A stretch of DNA of 64,000 nt from Thecamonas trahens ATCC 50062 (taxonomy: Eukaryota > Protista > Apusomonadida), in assembly GCF_000142905.1 (NCBI RefSeq), contig NW_013657647.1, forward strand, positions 165,142 to 229,141. The letters run 5' to 3'. The translations under genes were made by a program, and so were the position numbers. Below, one piece after another: positions 2,879-61,701 of this stretch (positions are counted from its first letter, which is position 1; every line of letters starts with the position of its first letter). The notes under the pieces are model-generated. The model was not told the DNA's origin and searched no databases. It worked only from the letters and a program-made list of their open reading frames with translations.

Positions 2879-3081
2879 CTCCGTTCGTTCTTGTCCGGTG
2901 AGTCAGGTCTGTGTCGGTGACTGTGGGTGGTGGTGGTGGCCCTCGGTGGCGTACGTGACACGACTCGGTCGGCGCAAGCCGATGTAGTATTTTTTTTTGG
3001 CGACATCTGGCATAGACGGCTGTCCCATCCGGCGAAGAAGTCGTGTGGAGGTTGTGAAGGAGAGCTGGGTAGAGAGCGAAG

Positions 3082-3549: not shown

Positions 3550-3823
3550 GAAGATGAAGAAGAAAAAAAGTCAGCCATGTATTTCATCCAGGGAATAAAA
3601 AAAAACGCCACCATCAGCAAACGGTGCATGTTTGAAGCCACGTGGAAGACAGCAACAGTTGTTGCCGTTCGCCAACTTGCCGACCAACGACACGACGACA
3701 AGCTGTAGCGGGAAAGGGGAGAGCACCTCACTCTCTTGCGAGTTGAGAGGGTACCACACATACACAAGAGAGTCAAAAGAGAGAGATAGACAGAGACAGA
3801 GAGAGTGTGGGTGTGCTGCGCCC

Positions 3824-30300: not shown

Positions 30301-30714
30301 CGACGACGGAAAGGCGGGAATGCCCTGGGCCCGCACAAGCGGCGAAGGCATGGCGTCAAAGTAAGAGGTGAACGATCCGACAAACGAGCCGGCTGCAAAC
30401 GAGGGCGTGGCGATGGCCGTCGGTGACTCGGCGGTCAACGGAGCGTACGACGACCTGACGGCCGGCGAGTACAGCAACGGTGACGGAAGAGGAGCGCCGG
30501 GCGAAGCCACGGTAGCCATGAGCACAGCAGGTGGTGGCTGGACAACAGCTCCATCTCCAGCTCCAGGAGCAGTCGACGAGACAGGCGGTGATGCGGCCGA
30601 AGCGAAGCGGAGCGACGATGCGGCCGAGGCAGCGAGGACATGGGCGTGGAGCGAGGAGCGGACCGACGAGGCGCGGAACGACGATCCGGTAGAGAGTGAG
30701 CCAGGTATGGTCAC
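18399..30714 (-). CDS. Three-module NRPS C*-A-T-C-A-T-C-A-T-R (~4100 aa), broken by two -1 frameshifts (~27882, ~26688)
   Basis: Three A domains (Y/FTSG...PKG, YGPxE, TGD), three T domains (GGHSL, GGHSL, GGYSL), C motifs HHIAVD and HHICCD plus a degenerate first C, terminal SDR (TGATGFVG, YSQSK). Joins track ORFs 27607-30714, 26645-27871 and 18399-26714. Confidence 0.92.
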
Positions 30715-36849: not shown

Positions 36850-37172
36850 TGAATGAACATACTTCCCATCCCCTCCTTCCTCGCCTCTGTTGCCGCCAAT
36901 TTCCCCATTTCGCTCGAAACCAAAAAATTCGTCCTTCGTCCAAGAACCCCTTTCCTCCAAAAAAAAGGCCTTCGGTCAGCTCCCCTTCCCCTCCCCCCCC
37001 CTCCCCCAAACCACGCGCACACCGCCATTCACTTCTCTCGACCACACATACATGTACGCCCCTCCCCCCTCCCCCCCCCCCCCCTCCCCCCTCCATTCCT
37101 TCCCCTTCTCTCCATTCCCACTCCCTTCCCCTTCCCCACCTCACTACATCCTTCCATGTGTCAGTTGCCAGG

Positions 37173-40100
37173 ATGGTCACGTGGAGCCAACGCGGCGGCC
37201 ATTCGGCCGCATTTGTGGCACTGGTTCTTTTTTGCGTTGCCCTCGCCGCTGGACCAGTGGGAGCAGCAACGATCGCTGAAGTCATGGCAGTCCCGCAGTG
37301 CGATACTGAAGGCAACACGCCGATGGTTCCAGATGCTGGCTTTCCCATCACCGCCCGCGTCATTGCTGACATGGACGGCAACGGCATCGACGAGGTCCTA
37401 GCTGCTGACGGATCAACCGTCTGGATGCACTCGCACGCGGGCGCTTGGTCGTCCATAGTGGCAGCTTCGGCTATTGGCACCGTCGGCCATATCATTGCAC
37501 CTGACATTAACGCCGATGGCTTCCTGGACATTGTCTTTGTCGTCGGCACCAGCGCGTACGCTGCTATCAACGACAAAGTCGGCGGCTTTCACGGACCCGC
37601 CGTCCTCCTGCCCACTGCGGCACAGGATGACTTTCTGCGCAAGGTCGACTGGAATGGAGACGGCGTTGACGACATTGCTGTAGTTACTTCTACTAAGACC
37701 ACGATGTACGTCAACGACGGTTTGGGATCGTTCACCGCGAGTGGCGATGCGCCGTTCGGCCGAGGCCAGTCGACTGGCGACGGCGCCGTCCATTTTCTGG
37801 ATCTCGACAACGATGGCGATCTTGACATTGTCGGGTATACTGGTACTTTCGTCGCCTACATCTTGCGCGACGGGCTCATGCTTGCAGGTCAGCCGACTCT
37901 GCTGCACTCGGTCGCCGTCCTCGATGCACCGCCCAGCACCCTTGCCGACCTTGACAACGACGCCAAGCCCGAGTACTACTTTGTCCTCGACAACAGCGTG
38001 ATGAAGATCACGTACCTGGACGGCATCATCGGCATTGTTTCTGTACGGGAAGTGTTTGGGCTCACTGACCTCACACCAGTTGATGCCGATCGGGACGGTG
38101 ACCTTGATCTTTTGGCTGCTACCGCTGGAGGCTCGTTGGTCTGGATGGAAAACACTGGCGCCAAAGACAGTCTTGTCCGCCAGCGCACCATCACACACGA
38201 ATCGAGTTCTGTCCTGGTCGGCAACGTCTACACGGCTGGCCCGCACGACATTTATCTCATTGGCACTTCCGTTTCCAAGCTCAGTTTTCCATCAACGCCG
38301 TATTTCGACGACACCACGTGGACCTTGAACACGCAAGAGGTTACCGATCCCAGTGGGATCAGCAACTTCAACAACCTCAAGCCCGGAGATATCGATGGTG
38401 ACGGCCTGGCCGATCTCATCGTAGGCGCCACTGTTCCAGGCTTTCAAGGTGCTACCACATTCTGGGTCAGGACAACTGCACTGCAGGGTCAACTGGGTAG
38501 CGTTACCGTCATCAACCAAGTCACCAATGTTGTGCTTCTTGTTGTTGATGTTGACAACGATGGCGACATGGACGTTATCTCTAGAGCGTCATTCGCTGAC
38601 GGTAACCTTGCCGCCGACATCAACGCGGATGGTGTGGGTCAGACCTGGCAACACCGAATCATCTCGTCGGAAAACAACATGTTTACCTTAGAGTTTCTCG
38701 ACATTGACAGTGACGGGCACAACGATCTCCTAGTGCTGGACACAGCCGCTCCCATAGTCTTCTTTGGGTTAGGTGGAGGTCACTTTGTCGCCACCTCTGT
38801 CCCCATTCCACTTTCAGTACCTGCCGGGTATCCATTTTCACTTCAGCCGGTTGCCATCATTGACATCGATGGCGACGGTGGCCGCGACCTGATCGCTTCC
38901 GGCGGAGGCTTCCGGGACATCGGAGTCCTCAAGTGGGTTGGCAACATTACCTACAACGAATATGCACCAATGGAGACGGTATGCTGTTTTCATCGTATCT
39001 CAACTGTCCGTGCCAACAACGATGACCTGGATGACATCTTTTATCAGTCCGATAACGACTTCACCGTCCGCCTCAACGATGGCACGGGCGGCTTTTCGGC
39101 GCCAATCATCATTCTCTCTCTCGCTTCAGTCTCTCAGGCGGTGGAGATGACATATCTTTACGACGGCCGCATTGCTGTTGTGTTCATGCCAAATTTTTCC
39201 GCTCTGCGCATCGCCATCTCGACATCTCCTTTTCTCGTCGACCTCGGCGAGACCATCGTCGTCTCAGACGGTGACGACACCAGGGGTATGGTTGTTGGAG
39301 ACTTTGATGCCGATGGCAGCCTTGACATTGTCTGGCCAGACCATCCCAATCTATCATTTCTCTCCATGGCCTACCGTAGCGCTTTGTTTGCCTACTCCGG
39401 GCGGACGCTGGCCTACCAGGCCGCTCTTCCGGGCTGCGAGTACGGTCCGACGTCGTTTGCCTGCCTCGTCGCCAACATCGCACGCATCCAGGTCTGCTCC
39501 GACAACGTCCTTCTCCTTCCGCCGGGCTCCTACCAGTGCCGCAGCGAGTCGCACCTCCAAGTCGTACGCCCTGTCTACTTGCGCGCGGAGATCCCAGGTA
39601 CCGTTACCTTTGATTGCGCTGACGGTGACAACGGCGCTGTTCTCTTCCGTGTCATGCCCAATACCATCACCCCAGTCCTCGACTCGAGCCTCGTTCTCGA
39701 GGACATCGCCATCACCCGCATGGCCGCCACCGACGGCAGCATCTATGGCGCGCCAGGCATCCGCGTCGAAGGCGCTGGCGCCTCTCTCACTCTCAAGAAC
39801 TCCAGCATCACCCACAGTACGAGCACTCCTGTCGCCTCGCCCAAGCCCATCCTCGACGTCGGCATCGGAGGCGCTGTGCTTGTCGGCGAGGGTGCGTCGC
39901 TCGTGCTTGACCGCGCGGTGCTGAGCGACAACACGGCGTTTTCCACCGGCGGCTCGATCTACGCCCGCGCAGCCGGCACGACCGTCACCGCCACTGCGTC
40001 CACGGTCACCAAGTCGATTGCGGTTCAGGGCGGCGCCGTTGCCATTGTTCAGGGTGCAAGCCTGGTGATGACCGACTCGGTCATGAGTGCCAACACTGCA

Positions 40101-41632
40101 ACTGGTCTCGGCGGCGGCGGCTTGACCGTTGATGAGTTCTCGTCGGCATCGCTGACCCGATCGCGCGTCCGCGACAACATGGCGAGCAGCTGCCCCGGCG
40201 GCGGCCTGCTTGTGCGTGATGGAAGCGCTGTGTCGCTGGTCGACACCGTTGTGACTCGCAACACCGCCCGGTTTGGCGGTGGTGTTGCAGCCGTTGCAAC
40301 CGAGCTTGTCTCGCGCGTCAACGCCGCTGAAGCCTCGGCACAGCTTCCCATCGCCACAGGCGCGATCGCAGCGCTAGCACCAGCGGATGGGCGCGCCGCT
40401 ACCATTGTGCTGACCAACTCGAACGTGACTCACAACGTGGCCCAGGCCAAGGCCGCCGGCATCCTCGCCTGTGGTGCGCCGGTCGCCGTCGCTGGTCCAA
40501 CATCGGCTGTCCGCGACAACCGCGACGAGACGAGTGATGCTCGATCCGACGTCCTGCTCTGCACCGCGGATGGCGTGGCGGCCGGCTATGCCTCGGCAGC
40601 TGAGCTCACGTGGGTGCGGGTGAGCGACGCCGACTTTGCGACTGCGCTTGCTGGTGCCACCATCGGTGGACCGCTCGCGCGCATCGAGTGGGTCACACCT
40701 CCGCCAGCCTCGCTCGAGTCTTCGCGCACCTTTGGCGGCGTGGTCCGCGGCATCGACACGATGGGTCGCACCCATGTCGAGCACGCGCAAGAGCTTGTTC
40801 TCGGGTTGGCCTCGGACGATGTGGTGGGCGTGGGTGTGCCCGAGGCGCCGCTAGCGTCGGCGCTCGCACTTCCGCCTGAGATCCGGGTCCAAGCCAAGAT
40901 GGACGTTGCAGACGCGCTGCCCATCGAGGTGCAGTACACTCTGGCGGCGGCTGGTACGCCCAGCATCGCGCTTGATGGCACAATCACACTTATCAGCTGT
41001 CTGACTGGGGCAGGGTCCACGGGTGTGGCCAACGGAATCGAGGTTCTCGAATGCGCGTGCCCGATGAACACCGTCGTCTCGACAGGGAGCATCAACATCA
41101 CGGCTGGGACGTGCGTGTGCGTCGCTGGCACTTGGTCGCCGAGCGGTCAGCCCAATGTGCCATGTGCGCCGTGTCCAGTCGGGGCTTTGTGCGATGGCGT
41201 GCTGTCCAAACCGCGGGCGGCGCCGGGCTACTTTCCTGACAGCGGCGCGTTTGTGCGGTGCCCGACGACGGGCGCTTGCCTCGGCAACGGCCGATGCGCG
41301 CCGGGATACACCGCCCGGCTGTGCGCCAAGTGTGTCCACGGGTACTATCGGCTTGGTGGGAGCTGCCGCAAGTGCGATACGAGCAAGAACGGTATCGTCG
41401 CTGCCCTTGTTGTCCTTGCCGCCCTCGCCATCACCGGTGCGCTGTATGTCTTTTCGCTCGCCGAGAGCTTGCGGTACAAGTTTGTGGCGGCGATGATCGG
41501 CGTCAACGCGCTTCAGATCTCAGCCATGTACGGGCGGCTCGACCTCGATTGGGGTCCGGTGGCCGACGTGTACTTTGACTTTGCATCGTCGGTTAACCTC
41601 AACTTTGAGCTCACCTCGCCCGAGTGCACAGT
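37173..41632 (+). pseudogene. FG-GAP/VCBS repeat + beta-helix + Cys-rich multi-TM receptor-like gene, interrupted by the LTR retrotransposon
   Basis: Signal peptide, many DxDxDGxxD repeats, GGA/N.A..GG repeats, CAPCPVGALC...CAPGYTARLCAKC, TM helices. At 41633 the frame enters the LTR and stops at 41786. Confidence 0.85.
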
Positions 41633-41778
41633 TGTTTCAGGAGTTACGTTTCCCCAGCGTGGCGAGGACGTCGACACACGTCAGACGGTCCAGGCGGAGT
41701 CAAAACTCCGCGATCCTCCTGCCAGAAACAGTCTAGCATTGAAGGTATCCGAAACTGTTGATCCGGACTACTGCAGCA
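41633..41778 (+). repeat. 5' LTR
   Basis: tgtttcaggag...ctgcagca; identical to 46468-46613. Confidence 0.97.
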
Positions 41779-41801
41779 TCTTTTAACAAGGGCACCGATG
41801 T

Positions 41802-47920: not shown

Positions 47921-50671
47921 TCACTGGGTTGTGATCTGTGGTGGCTTGAAGCGCTTGAGCCAGAGCGACGACGCAACCACCGAGACAGACGAGAGCGCCA
48001 TGGCTGCGCCAGCCACCAACGGGGGCAGGGTGATCTTGACTAGCGGGTAGAAGAGGCCGGCGGCAATGGGGATGCCGACGCAGTTGTAGAGAAAGGCCCA
48101 GAAGAAGTTGTGCCGGATGCGCGCGTAGGTGACACGCGCAAGGGAGAGCGCCGTCACAACGTCGCGAAGATCAGACTTCATCAGCACCATGTCGGCCGAC
48201 TCAATGGCGACGTCGGTGCCGGCCCCGATGGCGATGCCGAGATCGGCCTTGGTCAGCGCCGGCGCGTCGTTGATCCCGTCGCCCACCATCGCCACATGCA
48301 GGTCCGCGTCCTGCAGCTCGGCGACCTTGTCAGACTTGTCGCCCGGGAGAACCTGCGAGAAGACCCGATCGTGCGCAATACCAAGATCGCGCGCAATGGC
48401 CAGCGCTGTCCGCTCGTTGTCGCCGGTCACCATCCACACCAGCACGCCAGCAGCCTCCAGATGCTCGATGACAGGCCTTGCCTCGGCCCGCGCCGTGTCG
48501 GCCACCGCCACCGCACCGGCCATCTGTCCGCCCACGGCCACAAACATCACCGTCTTACCGTCGCCTTCAAGATCCACCGCAAACCGCTCCAGCGCGTCTG
48601 GAAGCATCACCGAGTTCTCGCCCATCCACTGCCTGTTGCCGATAACAACCCGCAGCTCCTGCCCGCCATCGGCGCCCGATGCGGCCAACGTCGCCTCGAG
48701 ACCGCGGCCGGAGACGGCGTTGAAAACCGACGTCTCAAGGCTGAGCCCGCCCCGCTCTTCGGCCTCGGCCCGAGTCACCATCGCGCGCGCCAGCGGATGC
48801 TCGGACATGGACTCTGTGGCGTGGACAATGGACCAGAACAGCGCATCGCCGAGCGCGTTGGCGGCTCCGTCGAATTGCCAGGCGGTGAGGGGGAGGATGG
48901 ACGCGTCTGTGACGATGGGCGTGCCGTGGGTAAGTGTCCCAGTCTTGTCAAAAAGGACGGCGTCGATGGTGTGCGCGGCCTCCAGGGCGGTCCCGCCCTT
49001 GATGAGCACGCCGTGAGCAGCCCCAACACCAGTGCCGACCATGATAGCGGTGGGCGTGGCAAGGCCGAGCGCGCAGGGGCAGGCGATGACGAGGACCGCG
49101 ATGCCGAAGAGGAGCGCAAAGAGAAAGTTGGAGCGATTGGCCGGAACCCACGAGTCTGGGATCACGCCCGAGTAGAGCAGGATGAGCCAGACGATGAAGG
49201 TAGCGATGGCAATGGCGATGACCACGGGCACAAAGTACGAGGAGACCTTGTCGGCAAAGGCCTGGATGGCCGGCTTGGACGTCTGCGCGTCGTGGACAAG
49301 CTGCACAATGCGCGCAAGTGTCGTGTCGGCGCCCACGCGCGTCACCCGCATTTTGATGCTCCCGGTCTGGTTGATGGTCCCGCCAATGAGTGGATCGCCG
49401 ATGGCCTTGGAGACAGGCAGCGCTTCGCCGGTCACCATCGACTCGTCAACTGCCGTTTCGCCGGCAATTAACTCGCCATCGAGCGGGACGTTCGAGCCGG
49501 GGCGGACACTCAGCATATCGCCAACTTCGACAAGTGCCACGTTAACCTCGACGATCTCGCCATCATCGCGGACAAGGAGTGCCGTGTCCGGCTGCAGCGA
49601 GAGCAGCGACTCGATGGCGGCCGAGGTCCGGCCTTTGGCCACCGTCTCGAGATACTTGCCGCCGATGATAAAGGTGATGAGGAGGGCGGCGGTCTCGTAG
49701 AACAGGCCTCCCTGCTTTGTGTTGGTCACGCTCGCTTCGATCACCACAAAGAGCGAGTACAAGTACGCCGTGGTTGTGCCCATCGCCACCAGCACGTCCA
49801 TGTTGGCCGACTTGTTGCGCAGCGCGTGGTACGCGCCCACGTAGAACTGGCGGCCGACGCCAAACTGGACCGGCGTGGTGAGGACAGTGAGCAAGAGTCC
49901 CTCCCACGTCAGACCTCGCACAATCTTGCGCATCAGCATCCGATGCGTGGGTGGGATGAACATAAAGACCATCGAGATGAGGAAGATGGGCAGCGAGAAG
50001 GCAAACGCCAACCAGAACAGCTTGCGCCACTTGGCCAGCTCGCGCTCGCGCATGGCCGCCAGCGATCGATCATGCACATCGTCCGATGCTAGCGATACGT
50101 CGTAACCAAGTTGCTCCACAGCCTCAACTAGGGCCCTCGGCCTTACCTTGTCCACCTCGTACTCCACCCGCGCCTGGCCGGACATGAGGTTGACGGACGC
50201 GCCGGTGACGCCAGGCAGATCCTTGAGCGCAGCTTCCACACCTGCCACACACGACGAGCACGTCATCCCCTCCACCATCAATCTGATCTCGCCAGCTTTG
50301 CCTCTGCTCAGTTCCCTGGCATCATACCCTAGAGCGCTGATGGCCTCCACCACCTGCTCGGCCGTCACAGACGCCTTTGCACGGACCGCGGCTTCGCTGG
50401 CGAGCAGATTGACGGCAATGTCCATCACACCCGGAAGGTTGGAGACGGCCCGCTCGACGGCAGCCACGCACGAGGCACACGTCATGCCCTCCACCAAGTA
50501 CTGTGTTCTGATCAAGTCGTTCGAGTCCTGAGCGTCCGTGTCGGTCTTGTCCATGGCTGGGGCCACATTGGACTCGAGATCGCCACCGCCGCCACTCGCC
50601 GCATCTGCGTGAGTGGATGTATCGGTAAGGTCCCCATCTGAGGAGTAGTCCGAGTATGTGTAACTACTCAT
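47921..50671 (-). CDS. Cu(I)-transporting P1B-type ATPase (ATP7/CCC2/RAN1-like)
   Basis: Two GMTCxxC HMA domains, TGE, CPC, DKTGT, SEHP, GDGIND, YN, MALSS. Likely start MSSYTY at 50671; the longer track ORF overlaps the neighbouring gene. Confidence 0.96.
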   Translation of the reverse strand: MSSYTYSDYSSDGDLTDTSTHADAASGGGGDLESNVAPAMDKTDTDAQDSNDLIRTQYLVEGMTCASCVAAVERAVSNLPGVMDIAVNLLASEAAVRAKASVTAEQVVEAISALGYDARELSRGKAGEIRLMVEGMTCSSCVAGVEAALKDLPGVTGASVNLMSGQARVEYEVDKVRPRALVEAVEQLGYDVSLASDDVHDRSLAAMRERELAKWRKLFWLAFAFSLPIFLISMVFMFIPPTHRMLMRKIVRGLTWEGLLLTVLTTPVQFGVGRQFYVGAYHALRNKSANMDVLVAMGTTTAYLYSLFVVIEASVTNTKQGGLFYETAALLITFIIGGKYLETVAKGRTSAAIESLLSLQPDTALLVRDDGEIVEVNVALVEVGDMLSVRPGSNVPLDGELIAGETAVDESMVTGEALPVSKAIGDPLIGGTINQTGSIKMRVTRVGADTTLARIVQLVHDAQTSKPAIQAFADKVSSYFVPVVIAIAIATFIVWLILLYSGVIPDSWVPANRSNFLFALLFGIAVLVIACPCALGLATPTAIMVGTGVGAAHGVLIKGGTALEAAHTIDAVLFDKTGTLTHGTPIVTDASILPLTAWQFDGAANALGDALFWSIVHATESMSEHPLARAMVTRAEAEERGGLSLETSVFNAVSGRGLEATLAASGADGGQELRVVIGNRQWMGENSVMLPDALERFAVDLEGDGKTVMFVAVGGQMAGAVAVADTARAEARPVIEHLEAAGVLVWMVTGDNERTALAIARDLGIAHDRVFSQVLPGDKSDKVAELQDADLHVAMVGDGINDAPALTKADLGIAIGAGTDVAIESADMVLMKSDLRDVVTALSLARVTYARIRHNFFWAFLYNCVGIPIAAGLFYPLVKITLPPLVAGAAMALSSVSVVASSLWLKRFKPPQITTQ

Positions 50672-51080
50672 GCTTGATGCAGATGATGTAGGTGTTTGGG
50701 GAGGATGAGGTGAGTCAGGTGACTTCCTCGGATCGTTGGTAGTCATGCTGTCGGTCGTTCTCCACATTGGTTCCACTTTGCTCCACCTGCTCCACACTCC
50801 ACATTCGCTCCACATGGCAATCGTTGGAATAAATTGAACGTTGTTCTCGCCTACCCCACATGGATCCAGTTCCGCTTGATTTGTGGTTGAATGCATCCCT
50901 GATTGTCGATCTGAACACCAGGAACTACAGCTGGTGTCAGACCTGTAGGACTGTTGGGCCGCGGACGATGCAAAGAATTCGCTGTGTGCTCCACCGGCTC
51001 CACCACGGCGGCTTGGTGTGCAACGGACGCCAGCGTAAACAAATTGAACCAACGTACCTCTCTCATGGCATCGGGCGGCA

Positions 51081-52589
51081 ATGGGGGCGTCGATCAAGAT
51101 GGACGTGGGCGTGGCGGGTCTCGGGGTCGTTGTACTCTGGTGCGTGCTTGCGGGCGTGGGCGCCATCCGCACGAAACCCTCGTCGTTCGTGAGGATGCTC
51201 AACGTCCGGCGGGCCGAGGTTGTGTTTGGCATTGGCGTGCTTGCGTACCTCGCTCTTTTCGCCGCCACGGCGACGTGGGTCGGCGTTGGCGACGGGCACA
51301 AGGTCGTCTCGGCCGACAAGAGCAGCTATCTCGGGCCGTTCGTCCTCGGCAAGCTTGCCAAGCTCTGCCTCGCGCTCATGTACCTTCCTGTGCTCCGCTA
51401 CCCCGGCCTCGACCGGTGGGTGGCGGGGCGCGTCCTGCCGTTTGAGCGGCGCCTCAAGTTCCATCGCGTGTTCGGCGCTGTTTTTCTGACAGTCGCGAGC
51501 GCGCACGGGGCGTGGATGGCGATTCGCACGAAGTTCGGCCATTTCTCGGTCGGCGGGGTCTCGCTTGCGGGCGCGGTAGCGCTCGGCTTGTTTGCGGTCA
51601 TGGGTGTCGGGGCATTGCCCACCATTCGTCGCCATCACTTTGGAGTCTTCCGTGCCCTGCATTGGCTCCAGGTCCCCGCCGTGATCGCTGCGCTCGTGCA
51701 CGTCCCAGGCATCGCGCTCTACCTCGCCGTTCCTGGATCGCTCTGGCTCGCTCTCCTATTGGCCCGCACAGTGCGCGCGTGGCGTGGACGGCGGCGTGCC
51801 AAGCTCTCGGTGCTTCCCGGCGAAGCAACAGAAATATCCCTTATGTGGCCCCACGAGTGGGCCGCACCGCGTCCGGGAAGCTATGCGTTCCTTCGCGTCG
51901 GTTCGGTGGCGTGGGCGGCGTGGCATCCATTCTCGGTGGTCGATTTCGAGCCGAGCACTCGGCACGTCCGGTTCATCGTCAAGGTGGTCCACCACACGCA
52001 TGCCCAATCGTGGACGGCGAAGCTGCACGCGCTCGCGGAGCGGGGCGCTAGTCCGAGCATCTGGATCGACGGGGCATATGGCGAGCTGAGCCTCTCGCAT
52101 GCCGCACTCGCGCAGTGCAGCCACGTGGTGCTTGTGGCTGGCGGAGTGGGCGTCACGCCCATGGCTAGCATTCTGCAGCACGTCGCGGACACTGAAGCAG
52201 ACTCTGTGCAGCGCGTGACGTTTGTGTGGACGTCGCGCTCCATGGCCGACGTGTGCACGCCGTGGATCGGCTCCACACTCGAGCACGCAGGCCGGGTTCT
52301 CGGCCCCCGGCTCACGACCTCGTTTTTCCATTCGGCGCCGCCGCCGTCACGGTCGATCTCGTCGTCGTCGTCTGACTCGGCCTCCTCGTCCTCGTCCGCC
52401 ATCGCTACCTTCGAATGGACGCCTGGTCGACCCGATTTGGACCGACTGCTCGCCGAAGTGCAAGCCACTGGCTCGCCTGCACGGGCCGTCCTTGTCGCCG
52501 TGTGCGGGCCGCCGTCGCTTTGTGATGCTGCCATTGCAGCAGGAACTGAGCATGGATTTACTGTTCATGTTGAGACCTTTCGATTCTAG
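51081..52589 (+). CDS. Ferric/cupric reductase (FRE/FRO-like)
   Basis: Heme His pairs FHR...AHG and LHW...VHV; WHPFS; DGAYG; AGGVGVTP; GRPD; VCGP; HVETF. Confidence 0.92.
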   Translation: MGASIKMDVGVAGLGVVVLWCVLAGVGAIRTKPSSFVRMLNVRRAEVVFGIGVLAYLALFAATATWVGVGDGHKVVSADKSSYLGPFVLGKLAKLCLALMYLPVLRYPGLDRWVAGRVLPFERRLKFHRVFGAVFLTVASAHGAWMAIRTKFGHFSVGGVSLAGAVALGLFAVMGVGALPTIRRHHFGVFRALHWLQVPAVIAALVHVPGIALYLAVPGSLWLALLLARTVRAWRGRRRAKLSVLPGEATEISLMWPHEWAAPRPGSYAFLRVGSVAWAAWHPFSVVDFEPSTRHVRFIVKVVHHTHAQSWTAKLHALAERGASPSIWIDGAYGELSLSHAALAQCSHVVLVAGGVGVTPMASILQHVADTEADSVQRVTFVWTSRSMADVCTPWIGSTLEHAGRVLGPRLTTSFFHSAPPPSRSISSSSSDSASSSSSAIATFEWTPGRPDLDRLLAEVQATGSPARAVLVAVCGPPSLCDAAIAAGTEHGFTVHVETFRF

Positions 52590-53267: not shown

Positions 53268-55981
53268 CTACGGCGCAAAGCTCTCCTCGTGGTACTCGGT
53301 GTGCGGCAGCGCCCGCGCCGCCGCCCGGACATCGTCCGCGAGCGACGCGATGCCGCAGTAGAACACGCCCAGCGGCGTGGTGGCCGTGTGATGTGCTGCA
53401 GCGTAGCCGAGCATGTAGGGAAACTGAGGACGCCCGGCGGCAATGACCGCGTGCGCCGCGAGGCTCGTCGGAATATCGTCTGACGACGGCGGCGACGCGC
53501 CTGAGACAAAGATCCGGATGTCGGTGACGAGCCGATGTGGCGACGGCGAAAGCGCGGCATTGGCCTGGCTCGCCAGCTCAGCAAGCAGCTCAAGCAGCCA
53601 CTCATAGTCGTCAAGCGAGCGGGTCACCCACCAGAACGAGATCGTCTGCTCGCGCGCTAGCTCTCCACGCTGAGCCCTGTGGATGAGGTCTGAGACAATC
53701 GACGCGTACGGCGTCACCCCGATGCCCGACGCGATGAGGATTGCGTGTGAAAACGCGGCCACGTTGCGCGAGTCAGTTCGGAACGGCCCGGCAACCCGGA
53801 TCGAACGCCCAATCACACGGTTTGCATCCTCAGCCACCGCCTCCACTACTCTGCACGTCCACGATGATGCGCCGCCGACGGCCTTAACGTACAGCGTGAT
53901 GTCGTCCGCCAGCGGCGACGACGCGATGGAGAACGGATGCCACTCGCGCCGCGCCAGCCACGGCAGGTTGATCCAGACAAAAGTGCCCGGTGCGAGGTGC
54001 TTGTGCATGGCGGGCGTGGCGCGGAACTTGATGGCAACCACCCGGCCAGCAGTAAGCGCCGCGCCAGAGATGGCGTGCGCTTTAAGCGAGGACGCGACTG
54101 AGATCATCCGGTGGACAATGTATGCGCCGAGGCCAAGGCCCGCAAACCAGGCCGTCCGGGACGTTGTCGGGTGTACAGCGGCGATGGCCGTAGCGAGGAA
54201 GACCAGGTGGTGAACGCCGTAGAAGAGCTCAAACCAAACCTTGCGGACGAGCGGGATAGAGAAGAGCGCCACTGTGGAGAAGAGCATGAGGAGGAGAAGG
54301 CCCGAGAAGCCAAGCCACGTGGCCAGAATCACCTCAATGGCCGAGTCAGCTGTCCGATACGTCGCCAATCGCGACCTTGCCGGGAACGCCGACTCACGCT
54401 CTGCCGCCGTCGCTGCGCCCACGCGCGTTGCGCTCACCAGGTGCGCCACGCCGTGGACAAGCCCGAGAAGTACGATGGCGCTCCCGGCCAGCCGATGGAA
54501 GACAGTCAGGTGCCGGCGCGAGGGGATGAGTCCGCGGAGGAGGGTGCCGCGCGGATAGATCCGGCTGAGGAGGTTGGCCATGACAGTGAGTGGCGCGTCG
54601 AGGAGCGGGAGGAAGACAAAGAGGAGGAGCGCACGGATCGCCCCGCCACACGCCTTGGAGACCACCAGCCAGCCACCGAGCAGGCCATGCGCCGGGTCGG
54701 TGAGGCCAGCCACGACCGAGTGGTTGATCTCAAAGAGCATCGTGATGGCCACCACCGCCGCCCAGAGGACAGACGCCGGCTGCGTCGCCAGCCGTTGGTA
54801 CGCGGTGTAGGCCCAGACCACACCCGCCGCCACCATCGGGAGCGAGGCCGTGGCCGACGACATCCGCGGCGCCACGTCGAGCGCCTCCATCCGCGCCATC
54901 AGCGCCATCGGGATGGGTACGATGGTCGGCAGCTGCTCCCACAGATGCTGCGGGAGCTGGCGCACATCGCCGACGGAGCCGAGCGCGTGGACGTGCCAGA
55001 GCGTCGCGCTCAGCGCCCGGAGCTCGGCGCTCTTGGTGTAGCCAACCGCCGTCGCCGCCGCCGTCACTGCCACAATCAGCGGATCATCATCGGAGAAGTG
55101 AACCGCCACCGATGCCGGCGTTTGTAGGCGAAAGACCTTGCGCCAGGCCGCCCACCGACCGTGGCCGCTCCCTAGCACCAGGCCCATCCTTGTCTGGCTC
55201 TCCGCCGTCCATCGGCTCACAAACCTGGCGTATGCCTTCCACGTCAGCTCACCTTCGCTCTCAGCCCGCACCAAGAACGCCCGTAGCGTCCGCTTCACCA
55301 GCGCTCGCCGATTGGTGGTCGGCGAGAACCGCGCATGTCGCGAGCCGATCGGCGTCATATCCATGATCTCCCGCGCCCCGTCCGCCCGCGCCTTTGTCTC
55401 AGCCCTGGTCCCAGCGCTGATGTACCGCAGGAGGAAGAAGACAAAGGCCGATCGCAGCGCCCGCGGGCACCGCAGCGACCACGCCCCGGCGAAAAGGCAA
55501 AAGCCACCAGTGGGATGCCCTCGGCTTCGTCCGCGGCGCCGCTCAGATCGGCCAGAAACGCATAAAGAAGCGACGATTGGCCCATGGCGACGGCGAAAGC
55601 GGAGGGCCCGACGACGGCCGAAGACAGGATGGGCAGGATGTCTCCTTCGGCAAGATCGGCGGCGGCTGGGAAGAGCGCAAAGGCAAACTCGCGGGCAAAG
55701 ACGGTGGCCACGTGCGGCGGGATACCGGTGGTGGTGTAAAGGTCGCTGGCAAAGCCGTCGCTCAGCTCAATCGTCGTCACCACCGCCAAAGTTGACGCCG
55801 ATCGCCGGGCGAAGAGCGTGGCGAGGAGCGTGGGCCCAGTGCCACCGGCCGATGTCGCGCTCCACCGCGCGATGAGGTCCGGGATCCGACGGTGAAGGGC
55901 GCGACCGGGGACGCGCGGGACATTTTCAGCGTCTGAGCCAAAGGTGGCGATGTGGCCACTGGTGCAGTATCGTGCTCGTCG
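53268..55981 (-). CDS. NOX5/RBOH-like NADPH oxidase domain with a degenerate EF-hand-like N-terminal region (frame break ~55493)
   Basis: FHRLAGSAIVLLGLVHGVAH, FELFYGVHH...AVH, EWHPFSIAS, AGPF, ASGIGVTPY, GRP, GVFYCG, HEESF. The core 53268-55364 is secure; the upstream extension is inferred. Confidence 0.85.
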
Positions 55982-58900
55982 TCACCCTCGTCATCGCTCT
56001 CATCGCTGCTCCAGGAGACAAGGCTGTCGAGCTCGGCGGCCGATCCGTCGCCGCCGTTGTAGCGGGCGAGGAGGGCCGAGGCGGCCGTCGAGTGTTTGAG
56101 CCAGAGGCGCGCGCCCTCGATGACCGAGGCGACGACCGAGGCGAGGAGCAAGACGATGACGAGAGCGACGATAACAGTCGCGCGTAGAGGCTGAGGTCCG
56201 ATGGCGAGAAAGAGGATGCCGAAGAGAGCGGTGAGCGTGGCGGCCATGTCGTATGCCGTAAAGAGCGACGACGCGTAGGGCGAGAAAAACCGAGGAGCGC
56301 CACCGATGCCGCGCCAATGAGGAGGAGGGCGGCGGCGAGGCTGATTCCGGTGTGGAGCGTGGCGTGGAGCGCAGCGTGGCCAATGTGGCTGGCGTAAAAG
56401 ACGAGAACATACCACGAGTGCGGCGGGACGTGCCGGTGGACAATCTGCATGTGGAGCGCCGGCCATGTCGCCGGACGCGCGAGGGCCATGGCGGCCGTGG
56501 CTGGGAGCCCGATGACCACTGCTATGCCGACAATGAGCACGACCGGGAAGTACGACCACCACTCGGGCGTGTAGCAGAGCGCGCCTGGGTGGCCAAGGAC
56601 CGACCGATCGGGTGAGCCAGGCACGGCTGAGGAGCAGATGGTGAACTCGAGGAGACGGACAGCAACCGGGAGGAAGGAGAACTCCAGGAGACTGTACCAG
56701 ACCCGGAGCGAGGCCCGGATGAGATCGATCGGCGCGATGGAAGCCTGGGTGAGGGTCCGACCGAGGATGGTCGACGCAGCCCAGATGGGATGAGTGGCGG
56801 CGAGGCGGGTGCCAACGGTGGGGATCCAGATCTTGATCCAGGCGATGCCGAGGGCAGCGGCGAGAGCGGTGGCGAGGGCGATCCAGAGCGGCGATGAGAT
56901 GGCGATGAGCCAGTTGGCAAAGTACGCCGAGTCGCCAGAGATGCCCAGGCCACACTCGGCGTCGACGACCGAGAGCTCGAGGCGAAAGATGGCGAGGAGC
57001 GAGAAAGCGCGAAGATCAGCGTCGCTGGTGGGCACTACCGTCGAGCCGTAGAGTGCCAGAAGCTGGAGCGCACCCACAGTGATGTCGATGGCGACCGCAA
57101 ACTGTGGGACAATCCGGGTGGAGAAGTACAGCACAGTGGAGGCGACGATGACGGCACCAATGACCACCGCCGCAGCCCACCCGTTGTGCGCGGCGCACGG
57201 GGTGCACACGCCCTGGAACCACCGATAGCCAGGCGCGCATGCTCCACACAGCCGCCCGCTGTACCCGATCCCGCACGACGCGCTGGCGTTGAGCCCGGGG
57301 CAGGCGGCGGTGACCCTGCAGCGGACAAAGGTGCGGCTTGGCCCTGATCCCACCGCCATGTAGCCCGGCGCAGCGAGGAGGCTCGCTGTTCCGCCGGGGC
57401 AGATGGCGCCTGTCGGGCACGGCGCGCAGTCCGGTCCGGTGTGACCCGGCGCGCACACGCAGTCGGCGATCGAGGTTGAGAGCGGCGGCGCGTCGCGGCC
57501 GGGAGGACAGGCGATGCACGAGCCGAGGCCGCCACCGGCGTACGATCCCTGGGCACAGCCGATACAAAAGGTGGCGTTGGCGTGTGGCGCCGTGCCTGGC
57601 TGGCAGAGCAGCCGTGTAATGGCAAGGACCGGTGCCGAGAGCGCCGACTTGTGCCCGCGCCATCGCGCGAGTACTTGGAACATGTACTCAGTGCCCGGCG
57701 TGAGGTCAGAGAGCTCGATGCTGAGCCGCGCCACGGCTTCGGCTACTAGCATCGAATTGGCGTAGACGTCGTAGACGAGATCGTCTGGCGCCTCGCTCTC
57801 GCTCACCCTGGCCGCCTCCCACGCCAACAGCCCGGTGGTGTAGCTGACCGACACCGCAAGCGCGCGCGGTGGGACAATGTGCGGTGTGACGCCGATGACG
57901 ATCTCGGTCGTCCGAGTCGGCGGGCCGTACTCGAGCACCAACGTGGCGTTGGAGCCGGGCGACGGCGTGTAGATTGGCTCGAAGACGAGCGTAGGGCCGT
58001 TGCTGTCGAGCGTCGCTCCGGCCACCGCGCTCGACAGGCAGAGCTCGAGCAGCGATGGATCAACGCCGGGTGCGGACGACGAGAGCGCGAGCGAGACGGC
58101 AATGCGGTCACCGATGGACACTGTGAGCGGCTCTGTAGCGTTGATCGAAAGCTTGGCGTGGCTGTTGTAGACGGGAGTGAGAGCATCGCGGACACGGACG
58201 ACGGCGAGATGTGGCGCGAGTGTGGCGATGCTGACCGGGCCGTCGTCGCTGCTCGCCAGCGCCAGTCGGCGCGGACGGCCAACAACGGTGGCAGTCGCTG
58301 CGCCCGGGGCAGTATGCACAGCAATGATCGTCGAAAGCAGCGACGACGACGACGCTGTCGCACGGTAGACAATGACTGCACTGGCGAACTCCGGCTCAAG
58401 CGGCGGAAAGACGGCCAGGTTCTCAAGCGCGGCGATCGGGACGGGCATGACCGGATTAAGTGGTGTGAGATCGCCGGCGGCGGAGAGAAGAAAGAGCTGC
58501 GTCGGTGAGGCGAGGAGAACGAGTGACGCTGAGAGCGGCTTGGGTGCGACGATGGCCGATGCCGGGACGACGACACTGGCGATGGTGGTCCAGTCGTGGG
58601 CGGCGATGAGCACGATACTGTCGCCAGGCGCAGCCGCGGCAGTCGAGGCAAGCGGGCCGACGACGATGGCCGATGGGAGGACAACGGCACGCACGATGGG
58701 CCCGGACGAGCGGTTAAAGCTATGCGGGAGGCTGAGCGAGGTGCCAAGGGGGACTGATGCCGAGATAATGAGCATGCCGTCGTGCGGCGAGGTTGTGAGT
58801 GTCGTACCGACAAGCATCGGACCGTCGTGTAGCGAGAGGATAACCGCAGCAGCTTCGGCAGCGTCGCCGGCCACCAGTGCAACAAGCCCGGCACTGCCTG

Positions 58901-59519
58901 CGCCCGGGAGGGCGGCGAGCGTGAGGGCGGGGCTGCTCGCCGCACCAATGACCGGAACGTGAGCATCGGCGGCGGCCAACACCATCGCCTCGGCCATGCC
59001 CTCGGCTGGCGAGGGGACGACGATGGCGTCTATAAAGACAGAGCTGTTGCCCGCCGTGGCATAGACAAGATAGCCCGGGAGCAGCGAGGTCGGTGGAAGA
59101 AACAGAGCCGACGAGGGGACGATGTGGCGGGAGGACGGGCTCGGCGCCGCGCACGACCATGATGCGTAAGCGCTCGAGCTGTTGTTGACCGTGCAGACTG
59201 ATGTGGTCAACTGCACTGGTGATGACGTCGTGGGGGAGGAGGACGAGGAGGAGACGACGAGCTGTGTGTCCGACATACGCACCATACGCTCGACACTCTG
59301 TCTGTGAACACCATCACCGCATGTCGCCGACGTGGAAATTTGCCACACACCCACGCTGCCCACACCATCATCACCATTGTCGCCATCAATATGTGAGAGA
59401 CATACATGGGAGGCCATCGCACCAGAGCCCGAGCCTGAGCCCACGTCATGGCTCAGACAGAGGACCACCATGACAGCCACCACCGCCAAGAGCTTTGCTA
59501 TCACCTGCCGGTGGACCAT
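55777..59519 (-). CDS. Signal peptide + FN3 + Cys-rich + ~9-TM receptor-like protein (frame break ~56280); probably fused to the NOX domain
   Basis: FN3 PPRAL...LAW...Y.VY...LSDLTPGTEYMFQVLA; CxxC repeats CAPCPTGAICPG...CGIGYSGRLCGAC; hydrophobic helices continue in the next frame (YDMAATLTALFGILFL, VIVALVIVLLL). Confidence 0.8.
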
Positions 59520-60066
59520 AATATAATCAGACTGCGCAGAAAGGGGAGGGGGGGAGGGGAGGGGGAGGGGGGAGGAGGACGGGGTATGGGTAAGGGCAGA
59601 GGGAGGTCCTGGGGGGTCAAGTGGACCTATGCCGGTAGTATGGGTGTGGAGACTGGTCGGCTGGTGGTGGCGGTAGCTGTCGTTGGTCGCTGGCTTTGGT
59701 TGCTAGTGCTTTGGCTCTTGACGCACGCGTTGAATGAGTTGATCGTCTTGACCACAGGTGTACCCAACTCGGGCTGGAAAGGCTACGTTAGACACGTAGA
59801 GTAGAAATTTGATCGACTACTATATAGCTAGTGGTGGTACGTATGTACATGGGTGGGTAATATAGGTAACCCGGCTTGTACATGGCCGTACGAGGTGCAG
59901 GTGGACCGGATGTCACTCATGTGAACGGTGCGGCGAAATCGGCGAGATTGGCACGTTTTTTCGTGGGAAATGAAAAAGGTGCAAGCGGAGCGTGTGGAGC
60001 GTGTGTAGGTGTGGGACAGGCAAGGCGGATTGAGGTTGGGAGGCAATACTCGTCGATAGCAGGAGC

Positions 60067-61701
60067 ATGAGTAGCACTGAAGAGTATGAGTATGACTTGG
60101 TGGGGATGTCGGTAGCGACGGGGCAGCTCGGTGGCATCGTATTGGAAGAGGTCGGTGGCTATGGAGGAGAGGCTCGAGGTGGTGCGAACAACGCCGTTGG
60201 CCACGACGACGGCCAGCATGATGGAAGTGATCAAGATGATGATGTGCGGAGACGGCTCGAGTCCGAGGTACAGGCCTTCCGCAGGCGCGCCGTCCGATTC
60301 GCTCCGCCTGAGGATCCGGAGGGACTGGACCACGTGGTCATGCTGCGATGGGAGGGGAAGGAGCGAAAGCAGTTTGGCGGTGACGGTGGCAGAGGCGGAG
60401 GAGGAGAAGAGCAGGGATCGGTGCTCGCTCGGCTGAACAACACGTCGTTTGCGCTTGCGCTCGGCCTCTGCTCCAATGCTGTCCTCCTTCGCGCGCTGGA
60501 CAACATCGGCTTGCCGACGGCATCAGGCTTTGCTACCCTCCCGGCCGGGCTGGCCACCTTTGGCTGGGTGGTGGGCTTTCTAGCCCTCGCTGCTGTTGCC
60601 TTGCTCTACGCGGCCAAGGTCATCGTCTCACCGAGTACTGTCTCGCGCGAATTCCGCAATCCGGCGCGCATCAACCTGTTCTTTGCGCCGATGCTCGCCA
60701 GTGTGCTGCTAGCCATCGCGGCACCGGACGACACCCGATCAGGCCCTGTCATGGTGGGGATGTGGATGCTGGCGGCGGCGTATCAGCTCGTTTTCTACAT
60801 GGTTCTCGTCCATCGATGGATCTACACGGCGACGGCGCGGAACGTGCACATGCTCAACCTCATGTCTGTGGTGGGCTTTTTCCTCCTCACCACCTTTGGC
60901 AGCACCATGCCGCGCGACGAGGCCGTCTCGATGCGGCCGGCACTCGAGTTTACCATGGTTGCTGGCTCCATTGCCCTCGTCGTCACCTTTCTCCAGCTCT
61001 TCATGAACCCGTTTGAAATCGGCGCCGAGGAAAAGTCATCGCCCATCATCTTCCTCTTCCTCGCCCCGCCGTCGGCCGCCGCCATTGCCGCCCGCTCGCT
61101 CTCTGATTTGTACCAGACTGCCGAGAGCGGCGCCGCTGCAGCTGGTGAAGCCGCCGGCGTCCACTGGGTCTTCCGCATTTACTTCTACTTTGCCATCCTC
61201 TGCTTCTTCTGGGTCATCCCGGGCGCCGGTGCGTTCTTCAAGACCAAGACCTTCAAGGTCTCCTTCTGGGCCTATCACTTTCCCGTCACCGCCTTTGCCA
61301 CTGCCTTTCTCACCTACGCCGCCAGAGAGACGCCCACCACCATCGTCCGCCTGCTCGCCGCCCTCGCCTGCGCCTTGTCGTTTGTCACTCTCTTTGCCAT
61401 CCTCGCTCGCACCATCTACCACGTCTTTGTCACCCTCTGTGGCTCATCGGCGCCGCCGTCGTCATCGTCCGCTCGCTCTGCCATCAAAGATCTGGCAGCG
61501 TATGGCGAGAGCGAGCGCCCGATCGACAGCTCGGTCCCGCGCAAGGCTCGCAAGGTCCGAGTCCATCGTCGGCGGCGGGTGCGTCGTGTGGAGCGCGCGC
61601 GGCCTTTGGAGGGTGGACGGCATGGTCGTGGTGAGGAAGGGAAGCTCAAGGAAAGCCTGGAGACCGAGAGCGTCGAGACTGGCGAGACCGGCTCGCTGTG
61701 A
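60067..61701 (+). CDS. SLAC1/TDT-family anion channel
   Basis: REFRNPARINLFFAP, FLFLAPPSAAAIA, FKVSFWAYHFP; about 10 TM segments. Confidence 0.9.
   Translation: MSSTEEYEYDLVGMSVATGQLGGIVLEEVGGYGGEARGGANNAVGHDDGQHDGSDQDDDVRRRLESEVQAFRRRAVRFAPPEDPEGLDHVVMLRWEGKERKQFGGDGGRGGGGEEQGSVLARLNNTSFALALGLCSNAVLLRALDNIGLPTASGFATLPAGLATFGWVVGFLALAAVALLYAAKVIVSPSTVSREFRNPARINLFFAPMLASVLLAIAAPDDTRSGPVMVGMWMLAAAYQLVFYMVLVHRWIYTATARNVHMLNLMSVVGFFLLTTFGSTMPRDEAVSMRPALEFTMVAGSIALVVTFLQLFMNPFEIGAEEKSSPIIFLFLAPPSAAAIAARSLSDLYQTAESGAAAAGEAAGVHWVFRIYFYFAILCFFWVIPGAGAFFKTKTFKVSFWAYHFPVTAFATAFLTYAARETPTTIVRLLAALACALSFVTLFAILARTIYHVFVTLCGSSAPPSSSSARSAIKDLAAYGESERPIDSSVPRKARKVRVHRRRRVRRVERARPLEGGRHGRGEEGKLKESLETESVETGETGSL

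What the first reader, a model, noticed from the sequence alone, without database searches (positions are those of the whole stretch)
53268..59519. Candidate receptor-NADPH oxidase fusion (FN3/Cys-rich ectodomain, ~9 TM, EF-like region, NOX) hidden by three -1 frame breaks
Seen: four overlapping minus-strand frames follow each other, each one base back: A 59519-55926, B to 55777, C open 55981-55355, D open 55766-53268. There is no intergenic space. Frame C has no ATG before 55585 yet looks coding (TSGHIATFGSDAENVPRVPGRALHRRIPDLIARW...). C+D read GIPLVAFAFFAGAWSLRCPRALRSAFVFFLL...ESEGELTWKAYARFV, which resembles degenerate EF-hands. Known: NOX5/RBOH have cytosolic EF-hands before the NOX core, and DUOX adds an ectodomain plus one TM. 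Inference: this is one ~2080-aa DUOX-like protein carrying a multi-pass receptor instead of a peroxidase. An odd TM count after the signal peptide would place the EF-like region in the cytosol. It could be a ligand- or contact-gated ROS generator; I know of no described example.
Basis: partly seen in the sequence, partly recalled or inferred. Interest (0 to 1): 0.88.

Follow-up and report, generated by a model that had tools for sequence, protein, structure and literature searches.

The report
Receptor-like membrane protein fused to NADPH oxidase
The three frame breaks are single bases missing from the Thecamonas trahens reference assembly; the real gene is one intact 2084-codon gene that joins a surface-receptor-like nine-helix membrane module to an NADPH-oxidase core, an architecture that no paper in the searched library describes.

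Summary
Four overlapping minus-strand frames run from 59519 to 53268. Contigs from two samples labelled as the organism, and from one marine metagenome, all carry one extra base at each break (behind 56284, 55966 and 55503). One metatranscriptome contig carries the extra base at 56284. With those bases the ORF is 2084 codons with no stop.

The organism is Thecamonas trahens. GenBank already holds this gene as hypothetical protein AMSG_06522 (1934 aa). That model sits on the same faulty DNA and differs from the read-corrected protein at each break.

The protein, in order:
- signal peptide
- beta-rich ectodomain
- FN3 domain
- Eph-receptor-like Cys-rich domain (DUF7630)
- nine TM helices distantly related to the fungal TRP-like family PF06011
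- acidic linker
- about 385 aa N-extension without EF-hands
- complete NOX core (four haem His, the His-119 equivalent, HPFS, GIGVTP)

The receptor module belongs to a family of at least 80 genes in this genome. The 17 paralogues whose 3' ends could be read all have short tails. The closest NOX relatives are unfused.

Function is inferred: superoxide made on the ectodomain side, possibly gated by contact or stretch. The scan noted this stretch before (s1-747636) and the same artefact at another Thecamonas locus (s1-743413).

The parts
53268..59519 (-). Whole gene (T. trahens AMSG_06522 locus). It is 2084 codons plus a stop once the three missing bases are restored.
59448..59519 (-). Signal peptide, aa 1-24 (MVHRQVIAKLLAVVAVMVVLCLSH). 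It is absent from the public model, which starts at M82.
   Evidence: Hydropathy peak at 6-24; comparison with the public model
57885..59447 (-). Ser/Ala/Val/Pro-rich ectodomain, aa 25-545, with six N-x-S/T sites. It has no Pfam family; there are only weak Ig-like leads.
57627..57872 (-). FN3-like domain, aa 550-631.
   Evidence: Pfam fn3 E 0.0019, 18.8 bits, below the gathering score
57192..57608 (-). Cys-rich module, aa 638-776 (17 Cys): Ephrin_rec_like plus DUF7630.
   Evidence: Pfam; all 19 sequences of alignment A1 (this protein plus 18 paralogues) match DUF7630; the AF2 model matches the EphB2/EphA2 and CaSR Cys-rich domains at Z 5.5-6.1, 28% id
56113..57182 (-). Nine-helix membrane module, aa 780-1136. 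Conserved extracellular Cys at 856, 962 and 982. A His-rich stretch at 1023-1056 is unique to this member.
   Evidence: AF2 helices; family alignment A1; PF06011 TRP hits in 6 of 19 members, one above the gathering score
56284..56285 (-). Break 1. One T (minus strand) is missing from a T5 run, at aa 1078.
   Evidence: X1, X5, X2 and RNA contig X19
55967..56112 (-). Cytosolic acidic linker, aa 1137-1185 (ends DESDDEGDDEHDT).
55966..55967 (-). Break 2. One base is missing, the third position of Thr-1185 (ACA or ACG in the reads).
54813..55966 (-). Cytosolic N-extension of the NOX part, aa 1186-1570. From about aa 1342 it aligns with the N-extensions of the unfused relatives P0002, P0003 and P0004. 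There is no EF-hand.
55503..55504 (-). Break 3. One T (minus strand) is missing between G and C, at aa 1341.
54123..54812 (-). NOX six-helix haem domain, aa 1571-1800. H1676 and H1690 fit the H-x13-H spacing; H1771 and H1784 fit H-x12-H. H1694 is the His-119 equivalent, and Ser-Gly sits at the Thr-178/Gly-179 place.
53271..54122 (-). Dehydrogenase domain, aa 1801-2084: FAD_binding_8 (HPFS), NAD_binding_6 (GIGVTP), and a conserved Phe near the C-terminus (F742 of the 744-aa NOX piece).

Best explanation
Shown:
- The locus is one uninterrupted 2084-codon gene of the apusomonad Thecamonas trahens.
- The three -1 breaks are bases missing from the reference assembly.
- The protein is a cis-fusion. 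Its N-terminal 1136 aa form a member of a very large Thecamonas family of surface proteins. That family has a variable ectodomain, an Eph-like Cys-rich DUF7630 domain and a 9-TM module distantly related to PF06011 'TRP-like' proteins.
- After a 50-aa acidic linker comes a complete NADPH-oxidase unit. Its closest relatives are stand-alone NOX proteins of 900-1030 aa, followed by EF-hand NOX5-like enzymes.

Inferred:
- With N-out and 9 + 6 helices, the NADPH/FAD domain is cytosolic. The outer haem then faces the same side as the ectodomain.
- The enzyme would pass electrons from cytosolic NADPH to O2 at the cell surface or phagosome lumen and make superoxide.
- The EF-hands of its ancestors are lost. 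The most likely control is therefore intramolecular: a change in the receptor/channel-like module (contact, ligand or membrane stretch) passed through the N-extension to the dehydrogenase domain. This would parallel the way EF-hands act in NOX5 and DUOX.
- Thecamonas is a gliding bacterivore, so a role in prey contact or killing, or in surface signalling, is plausible.
For: One gene:
- There is an insertion at every break in three DNA data sets and one RNA contig.
- The corrected ORF has no stop.
- The polymorphism at break 2 is synonymous. Three of the five other differences from the reads are synonymous.
- Dispersed old mini-copies carry receptor TM, linker and NOX C-terminal pieces in the same order.
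- GenBank's caller also made one gene from the locus.

NOX part:
- Pfam finds the triad.
- The best PDB matches are NOX5, DUOX1, csNOX5 and NOX2 at E about 1e-26.
- The haem His, HPF, GxGxTP and a Phe near the C-terminus are invariant or nearly invariant across the 46-sequence alignment and are present here.
- His-119, the NOX-versus-reductase marker of Zhang et al. 2013 (PMC3591440), is present.
- 8 of the 10 next-nearest relatives tested carry EF-hands.

Receptor part:
- At least 80 paralogues.
- DUF7630 in 19 of 19 sequences and PF06011 in 6 of 19, one at 29.1 bits against a cut-off of 28.5.
- The AF2 model has pLDDT 77 and 7 TM helices before break 1.

Topology: conserved Cys lie in the loops predicted to be outside, and Arg-rich loops lie inside.

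Fusion specific to this lineage:
- The tails of the 17 paralogues whose 3' ends could be read are about 50-260 aa.
- P0002 is a separate gene on its contig.
- No fused relative appears among the 150 best of 1.84 billion representatives or among long proteins.
Against: - No enzymatic, localisation or full-length transcript data exist. The only RNA evidence is one 154-nt metatranscriptome contig.
- The library type of X1 and X5 is not on record.
- This member's TM module is divergent (about 25% identity to paralogues). It gives no PF06011 hit itself, and the family's LRYGFLVARF motif is replaced by a His-rich stretch.
- Ser replaces Thr-178.
- Gating by the ectodomain is untested.
- An internal start (M1313 or M1387) could also yield a stand-alone NOX.
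- Contigs drop rare variants, so a frameshifted minor allele in the culture cannot be excluded.
Confidence: 0.7

Rival explanations
1. The frameshifts are real in the reference strain. The locus would then be a pseudogene, or two genes: a truncated receptor of 1197 aa and a NOX starting at an internal Met. The intact form would exist only in other strains or alleles.
For: The window and the GenBank model share the three deletions. The window also differs from all reads at two synonymous sites, 53823 and 53838, which look more like an allele than like errors. Contigs cannot show absence of a minor variant.
Against: All three DNA sources, including two labelled with the organism, carry the bases in single unbroken contigs across all three sites. 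Frame breaks are noted at 266 places in this assembly, and another was traced by a follow-up agent to a missing base. This pattern fits an assembly-wide indel problem.
Confidence: 0.07
2. The fusion is real, but the flavocytochrome works as a ferric or cupric reductase for metal uptake rather than as a dedicated ROS generator.
For: The neighbours are a Cu-type P-ATPase with HMA domains and a 502-aa ferric-reductase-family gene. This member has a His-rich segment at aa 1023-1056. Ser sits at the Thr-178 position. Pfam cannot separate FRE from NOX.
Against: The His-119 equivalent is present, and it is said to be conserved in most of the NOX group. The haem spacing is H-x13-H and H-x12-H. The nearest characterised relatives are NOX5 and DUOX, and 8 of 10 near neighbours carry EF-hands. 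No EF-hand FRE forms were observed by Zhang et al. (PMC3591440).
Confidence: 0.2
3. The fusion is real, but the receptor-family half only anchors or targets the oxidase, for example to the ventral surface or phagosome. Activity would be constitutive or controlled by other factors, not by the ectodomain.
For: The TM module here has lost several family-conserved motifs. The unfused paralogue P0003 has the same EF-less N-extension, so this NOX subfamily must be regulated without a receptor.
Against: Nothing tested argues directly against it. The ectodomain keeps its Cys pattern and its N-x-S/T sites, which argues only that it is still a functional surface domain.
Confidence: 0.3

Closest known systems
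DUOX1/DUOX2 (dual oxidases)
   Same: The layout is the same: signal peptide, large ectodomain, extra TM segment(s) giving an odd count, a cytosolic regulatory region, then a 6-TM NOX core and a FAD/NADPH domain. DUOX1 is among the best solved matches to the NOX part (E 1.6e-26).
   Different: The ectodomain is FN3 plus Eph-like Cys-rich, not peroxidase-homology; no An_peroxidase hit appeared in the frame-A scan at E<=0.01 or in the scans of aa 1-540 and 774-1078 at E<=10. There are nine extra helices, not one. There are no functional EF-hands.
NOX5 / fungal NoxC / RBOH-like EF-hand NOX (the 'NOX-EF' group of Zhang et al. 2013)
   Same: The catalytic core is closest to this group: 8 of 10 next-nearest relatives carry EF-hands, and NOX5 is the best PDB match. 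The closest relative P0002 keeps one canonical EF loop.
   Different: No EF-hand is detectable here. Instead there is an N-extension of about 385 aa and an N-terminal receptor module of about 1136 aa.
PF06011 'TRP-like' membrane proteins (S. pombe Pkd2, S. cerevisiae Flc1-3, A. nidulans TrpR)
   Same: These are also signal peptide plus extracellular domain plus a multi-pass domain. Paralogues of the receptor half hit PF06011 over the same helices (profile 196-399), one above the curated cut-off. Atlas neighbours include clusters named 'TRP C-terminal domain'.
   Different: The ectodomain is DUF7630/Eph-like. This particular member gives no PF06011 hit. No solved structure exists to compare the fold. 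None of the named members of that family is known to me to carry an enzyme domain (own knowledge).
T. trahens 'NADPH oxidase' XP_013754789.1 (P0003) and environmental P0002 and P0004
   Same: They have 28-36% identity over the whole NOX part, including the N-extension.
   Different: They are stand-alone proteins of 900-1030 aa with no receptor. P0002 is a separate gene on its contig.
Oomycete FRE with extracellular DOMON domains, and oomycete GPCR-enzyme 'bigrams'
   Same: These are conceptual parallels. One is an extracellular module fused to an FRD protein (PMC3591440). The other is a multi-pass receptor fused to a cytosolic enzyme (own knowledge).
   Different: The domains and lineages differ. 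Neither combines a multi-pass receptor module with a NOX core.

Membership tests
NOX group of the ferric-reductase-domain superfamily | 6-TM domain with two His pairs (TM3 H-x13-H, TM5 H-x12-H) that ligate two haems | tested here: met
   PF01794 E 9e-11. H336 and H350 are invariant and H431 and H444 nearly invariant in 46 sequences, and all are present here. The spacing patterns were found at aa 1676 and 1771.
NOX group of the ferric-reductase-domain superfamily | FAD-binding HPF[ST] and NADPH-binding GxGxxP motifs, and the cytosolic dehydrogenase domain | tested here: met
   PF08022 E 3e-8 and PF08030 E 5e-16. HPFS, GIGVTP and a conserved Phe near the C-terminus are present.
NOX group of the ferric-reductase-domain superfamily | NOX-versus-reductase markers His-119 and Thr-178-Gly-179 (Zhang et al. 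2013) | tested here: inconclusive
   The His-119 equivalent is present (VHGVAH). Ser-Gly, not Thr-Gly, is invariant in this subfamily.
NOX group of the ferric-reductase-domain superfamily | NADPH-dependent superoxide or H2O2 production | not testable with these tools
   This needs expression and an assay.
DUOX | Extracellular peroxidase-homology domain, one extra TM and two EF-hands | tested here: not met
   No An_peroxidase and no EF-hand hit in the scans run (frame A at E<=0.01; aa 1-540, 774-1078, 1186-1339 and 1343-1559 at E<=10). There are nine extra helices.
NOX5 / NOX-EF | Canonical Ca2+-binding EF-hands N-terminal to the core | tested here: not met
   No Pfam EF-hand at E<=10 in aa 1186-1339 or 1343-1559. 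hhalign against EF-NOX aligns only the core.
DUF7630 / Ephrin_rec_like Cys-rich receptor family of Thecamonas | Cys-rich DUF7630 domain directly followed by the conserved 9-TM module | tested here: met
   Identity is 22-28% to 17 paralogues (18% to one that is mostly withheld letters) over the Cys-rich part and TM1-7, with 27 invariant columns including 17 Cys. Own-genome E values reach 2e-35. DUF7630 scores E 1.5e-4 here, below the gathering score, but above it in many paralogues.
PF06011 TRP-like (Flc/Pkd2) | A match to the PF06011 profile at or above its gathering score | tested here: inconclusive
   This protein gives no hit. Paralogue L024 scores 29.1 bits against a cut-off of 28.5, and five others score 17-23 bits over the same profile region.

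The most novel reading that the evidence does not exclude
A self-contained sensor-effector. A TRP-like or receptor-like nine-helix module with an adhesion-type ectodomain would directly gate a NADPH oxidase in cis. This would replace the Ca2+/EF-hand control of the ancestral NOX, so a phagotrophic protist could fire superoxide exactly where its surface meets prey or substrate.
Probability: 0.2. Interest if true: 0.8.

Novelty: new variant of a known kind. Interest (0 to 1): 0.5.

Why it matters
NOX enzymes are known to be switched on by cytosolic subunits, Ca2+/EF-hands or phosphorylation. DUOX is the only well-known class with its own large ectodomain. A NOX core joined to a receptor- or channel-like multi-pass module would be a further, independent solution to coupling outside events to ROS output. 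It occurs in Apusomonadida, a sister lineage of Opisthokonta, which is relevant to the origin of phagocyte-type oxidative killing. If the fused protein can be expressed, it offers a single-polypeptide system for testing how an extracellular or membrane signal reaches a NOX dehydrogenase domain.

Practically, the public model AMSG_06522 lacks the signal peptide and 38 aa at the end of TM7 and through TM8, which gives the wrong TM parity. The Thecamonas reference carries many such one-base errors, which fake introns conceal.

Tried and rejected
- **Programmed -1 frameshifting or editing.** Rejected. A DNA metagenome contig and two organism-labelled data sets carry the bases.
- **Introns as the cause of the frame changes.** Rejected. 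The corrected ORF is continuous, and the public model's three skips coincide with the breaks.
- **P0006 (2323 aa) as a fused orthologue.** Rejected. It is three tandem NOX units with no similarity to the receptor half.
- **Long-protein search with the NOX region of P0154.** It returned only two plant gene-model fusions.
- **Word-based search with the receptor region.** It returned only Fabomonas P0001. That tool did not return the Thecamonas paralogues either, so the blank says little.
- **EF-hand homology by profile-profile comparison.** Only the NOX core aligned.
- **BLASTP of the frame-C piece against P0002 and P0003.** Not significant.
- **Fold search of the TM module.** Foldseek gave no hit at E<=0.001. 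VIA-align gave all Z<=6.1, and only the Cys-rich part matched meaningfully.
- **The '6353-aa ORF' paralogue on C71.** The long frame is a run of N.
- **AF2 model of the NOX part with its N-extension.** The job was interrupted twice and the machine then stopped answering. No model was obtained.
- **Handling of the joined protein.** The joined, read-corrected protein was built only inside scripts. It was never sent to the search or fold tools; its pieces were searched apart.
Full report
**Observation**

On the minus strand, ORF 59519-55926 (1197 aa), ORF 56955-55777, open frame 55981-55355 and open frame 55766-53268 overlap, and each is one base back from the last. The last frame holds Ferric_reduct, FAD_binding_8 and NAD_binding_6. 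The first holds weak fn3, Ephrin_rec_like and DUF7630 matches. The description is accurate.

**What the breaks are**

I laid public contigs on 53560-59540. Four runs were used:
- X1 and X5, both labelled with the organism, from different samples (2010 and 2020)
- X2, a marine metagenome, whose 5557-nt contig covers 53975-59528
- X19, a metatranscriptome

Every DNA source has one extra base behind 55503, behind 55966 and behind 56284. A 154-nt RNA contig from X19 (56217-56364, no mismatch) has the 56284 base.

- **Corrected ORF.** Adding the three bases in a script gives one ORF of 2084 codons with no stop.
- **Polymorphism at 55966.** The sources differ here, T or C on the plus strand. That reads ACA or ACG, both Thr, so it is a synonymous polymorphism in the corrected frame.
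- **Other differences from the reads.** Three of the five are synonymous.
- **Chance.** Composition alone makes 442 stop-free codons between the two halves very unlikely, about 2.5e-5 by my estimate.
- **Assembly-wide pattern.** Earlier notes list 266 frameshift remarks in this assembly. One followed-up case had the same cause.

I conclude that the breaks are assembly deletions. A minor defective allele cannot be fully excluded, because contigs drop rare variants. The library type of X1 and X5 is not on record.

**Identity**

A cluster look-up shows the locus is Thecamonas trahens ATCC 50062 AMSG_06522 (KNC51171.1, 1934 aa, 'FAD-binding FR-type domain-containing protein'). That model reads the same faulty DNA. 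Compared with the read-corrected protein, it:
- starts at M82, so it loses the signal peptide
- skips aa 1073-1110, the end of TM7 and all of TM8
- mistranslates or skips roughly aa 1186-1213 and 1340-1373

**Anatomy (aa of the corrected protein)**

- **1-24:** signal peptide.
- **25-545:** Ser/Ala/Val-rich ectodomain with N-x-S/T sites and only weak Ig-like leads.
- **550-631:** FN3-like domain.
- **638-776:** Cys-rich Eph-receptor-like/DUF7630 domain. The AF2 model matches the EphB2/EphA2 and CaSR Cys-rich domains at Z 5.5-6.1.
- **780-1136:** nine TM helices. Seven are in the AF2 model (pLDDT 77). Two more come from hydropathy and the family alignment.
- **Loops of the TM module:** conserved Cys lie in the loops predicted to be outside, and Arg-rich loops lie inside.
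- **1137-1185:** acidic linker.
- **1186-1570:** cytosolic N-extension.
- **1571-1800:** six-helix haem domain.
- **1801-2084:** FAD/NADPH domain.

With N-out and 9 + 6 helices, the dehydrogenase domain is cytosolic and the outer haem faces the ectodomain side.

**The NOX half**

- The best solved relatives are NOX5, DUOX1, csNOX5 and NOX2, at E about 1e-26.
- In a 46-sequence alignment, the haem His, HPF, GxGxTP and a Phe near the C-terminus are invariant or nearly invariant, and all are present here.
- The His-119 equivalent, which Zhang et al. 2013 give as a NOX-versus-reductase marker, is present. Ser replaces Thr-178.
- A full HMMER scan of 1.84 billion representatives puts three stand-alone proteins closest: P0002 (1027 aa, 36%), P0003 (the Thecamonas 'NADPH oxidase', 899 aa) and P0004 (951 aa).
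- These three share the N-extension from about aa 1342 onward.
- Next come NOX5-like enzymes, and 8 of the 10 tested carry EF-hands.
- This protein has no EF-hand: Pfam finds nothing at E<=10 and there is no PS00018 match.
- P0002 keeps one canonical loop, and the Thecamonas protein has a gap in that stretch of the alignment.

**The receptor half**

- It belongs to a family of at least 80 genes in this genome, with ORFs of about 630-2700 aa.
- Alignment A1 holds this protein and 18 paralogues. All 19 carry DUF7630, and 6 match PF06011 (TRP-like, Flc/Pkd2) over the same helices. One scores 29.1 bits against a cut-off of 28.5.
- Atlas neighbours point the same way.
- The 17 paralogues whose 3' ends could be read have tails of only about 50-260 aa after the module.
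- An apparent 6353-aa member is a run of N.
- The fold of the TM module has no solved counterpart.
- This member is divergent. A His-rich stretch (aa 1023-1056) replaces a family motif.

**Is the fusion shared?**

No fused relative was found among the 150 best NOX matches or among long proteins. P0002 is a separate gene on its contig. Within Thecamonas, a dispersed repeat of about 2 kb has copies that are 89-95% alike. It carries pieces of aa 903-1043, 1109-1395 and 1913-2084 of this gene, in order, at 67-84% DNA identity. The two halves were therefore already joined when that element arose.

**Mechanism**

The shown parts are the intact fused ORF, the complete cofactor motifs, and an odd TM count predicted from the model, hydropathy and alignment. 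The rest is inferred:
- NADPH-to-O2 electron transfer to the ectodomain side.
- Control in cis by the receptor/channel-like module, given the loss of EF-hands.

Three rivals remain:
- A metal reductase. The neighbours are a Cu-ATPase and a small FRD gene, and there are the His-rich stretch and the Ser at position 178.
- A mere anchoring role for the receptor half.
- With low odds, a truly broken allele.

**Literature**

No paper in the searched library combines Thecamonas with NADPH oxidase, or NOX with ephrin-receptor-like domains. Two NOX evolution papers do not mention apusomonads.

**Verdict**

This is a real and unusual NOX architecture. It is already deposited as a mis-modelled hypothetical protein, but I found no description of it. 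The frame breaks themselves are ordinary assembly errors.

Noticed in passing
G000 C60:216920-218165, C48:310700-311988, C102:8169-9416, C73:25240-25655 (loci L005, L007, L010, L013); also C34, C61, C96: A dispersed repeat of about 2 kb with at least 7 copies that are 89-95% identical to each other. It carries a mosaic of this gene's fragments (gene nt 2864-3129, 3386-3664, 3735-4121, 5747-5942, 6077-6252) with stops and frame changes. It looks like a mobile element that captured gene pieces.
   Followed up: partly
G000 C105:2-1351 (L002): A 99%-identical copy of the last 450 codons of the gene lies at the very start of a small contig. It is either a haplotig or a recent duplicate.
   Followed up: no
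window 56352-56453 (aa 1023-1056): Nine His occur in 34 residues around TM6 of the receptor module, including an H-x13-H-x3-H pattern. The stretch replaces the family's conserved LRYGFLVARF...RK motif. It may bind metal.
   Followed up: no
window 36423-41786 (+) and at least 80 loci genome-wide: This is a very large Thecamonas family of surface proteins with variable ectodomains (here FG-GAP repeats and a beta-helix), a DUF7630 Cys-rich domain, a 9-TM PF06011-like module and short Pro-rich tails.
   Followed up: partly
window 47921-52589 and 60067-61701: The neighbours are a Cu-type P-ATPase with HMA domains (minus strand), a 502-aa ferric-reductase-family gene (plus strand, convergent with this gene) and a SLAC1-type anion channel (plus strand, divergent, 547 bp from the start codon).
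   Followed up: partly
window 18399-30714 (-): Three long overlapping ORFs (18399-26714, 26645-27871, 27607-30714) look like one gene split by the same kind of one-base assembly error.
   Followed up: no
runs X2, X10, X12: Marine and estuary metagenomes hold this stretch almost word for word. This organism or a very close strain therefore occurs in the environment.
   Followed up: partly
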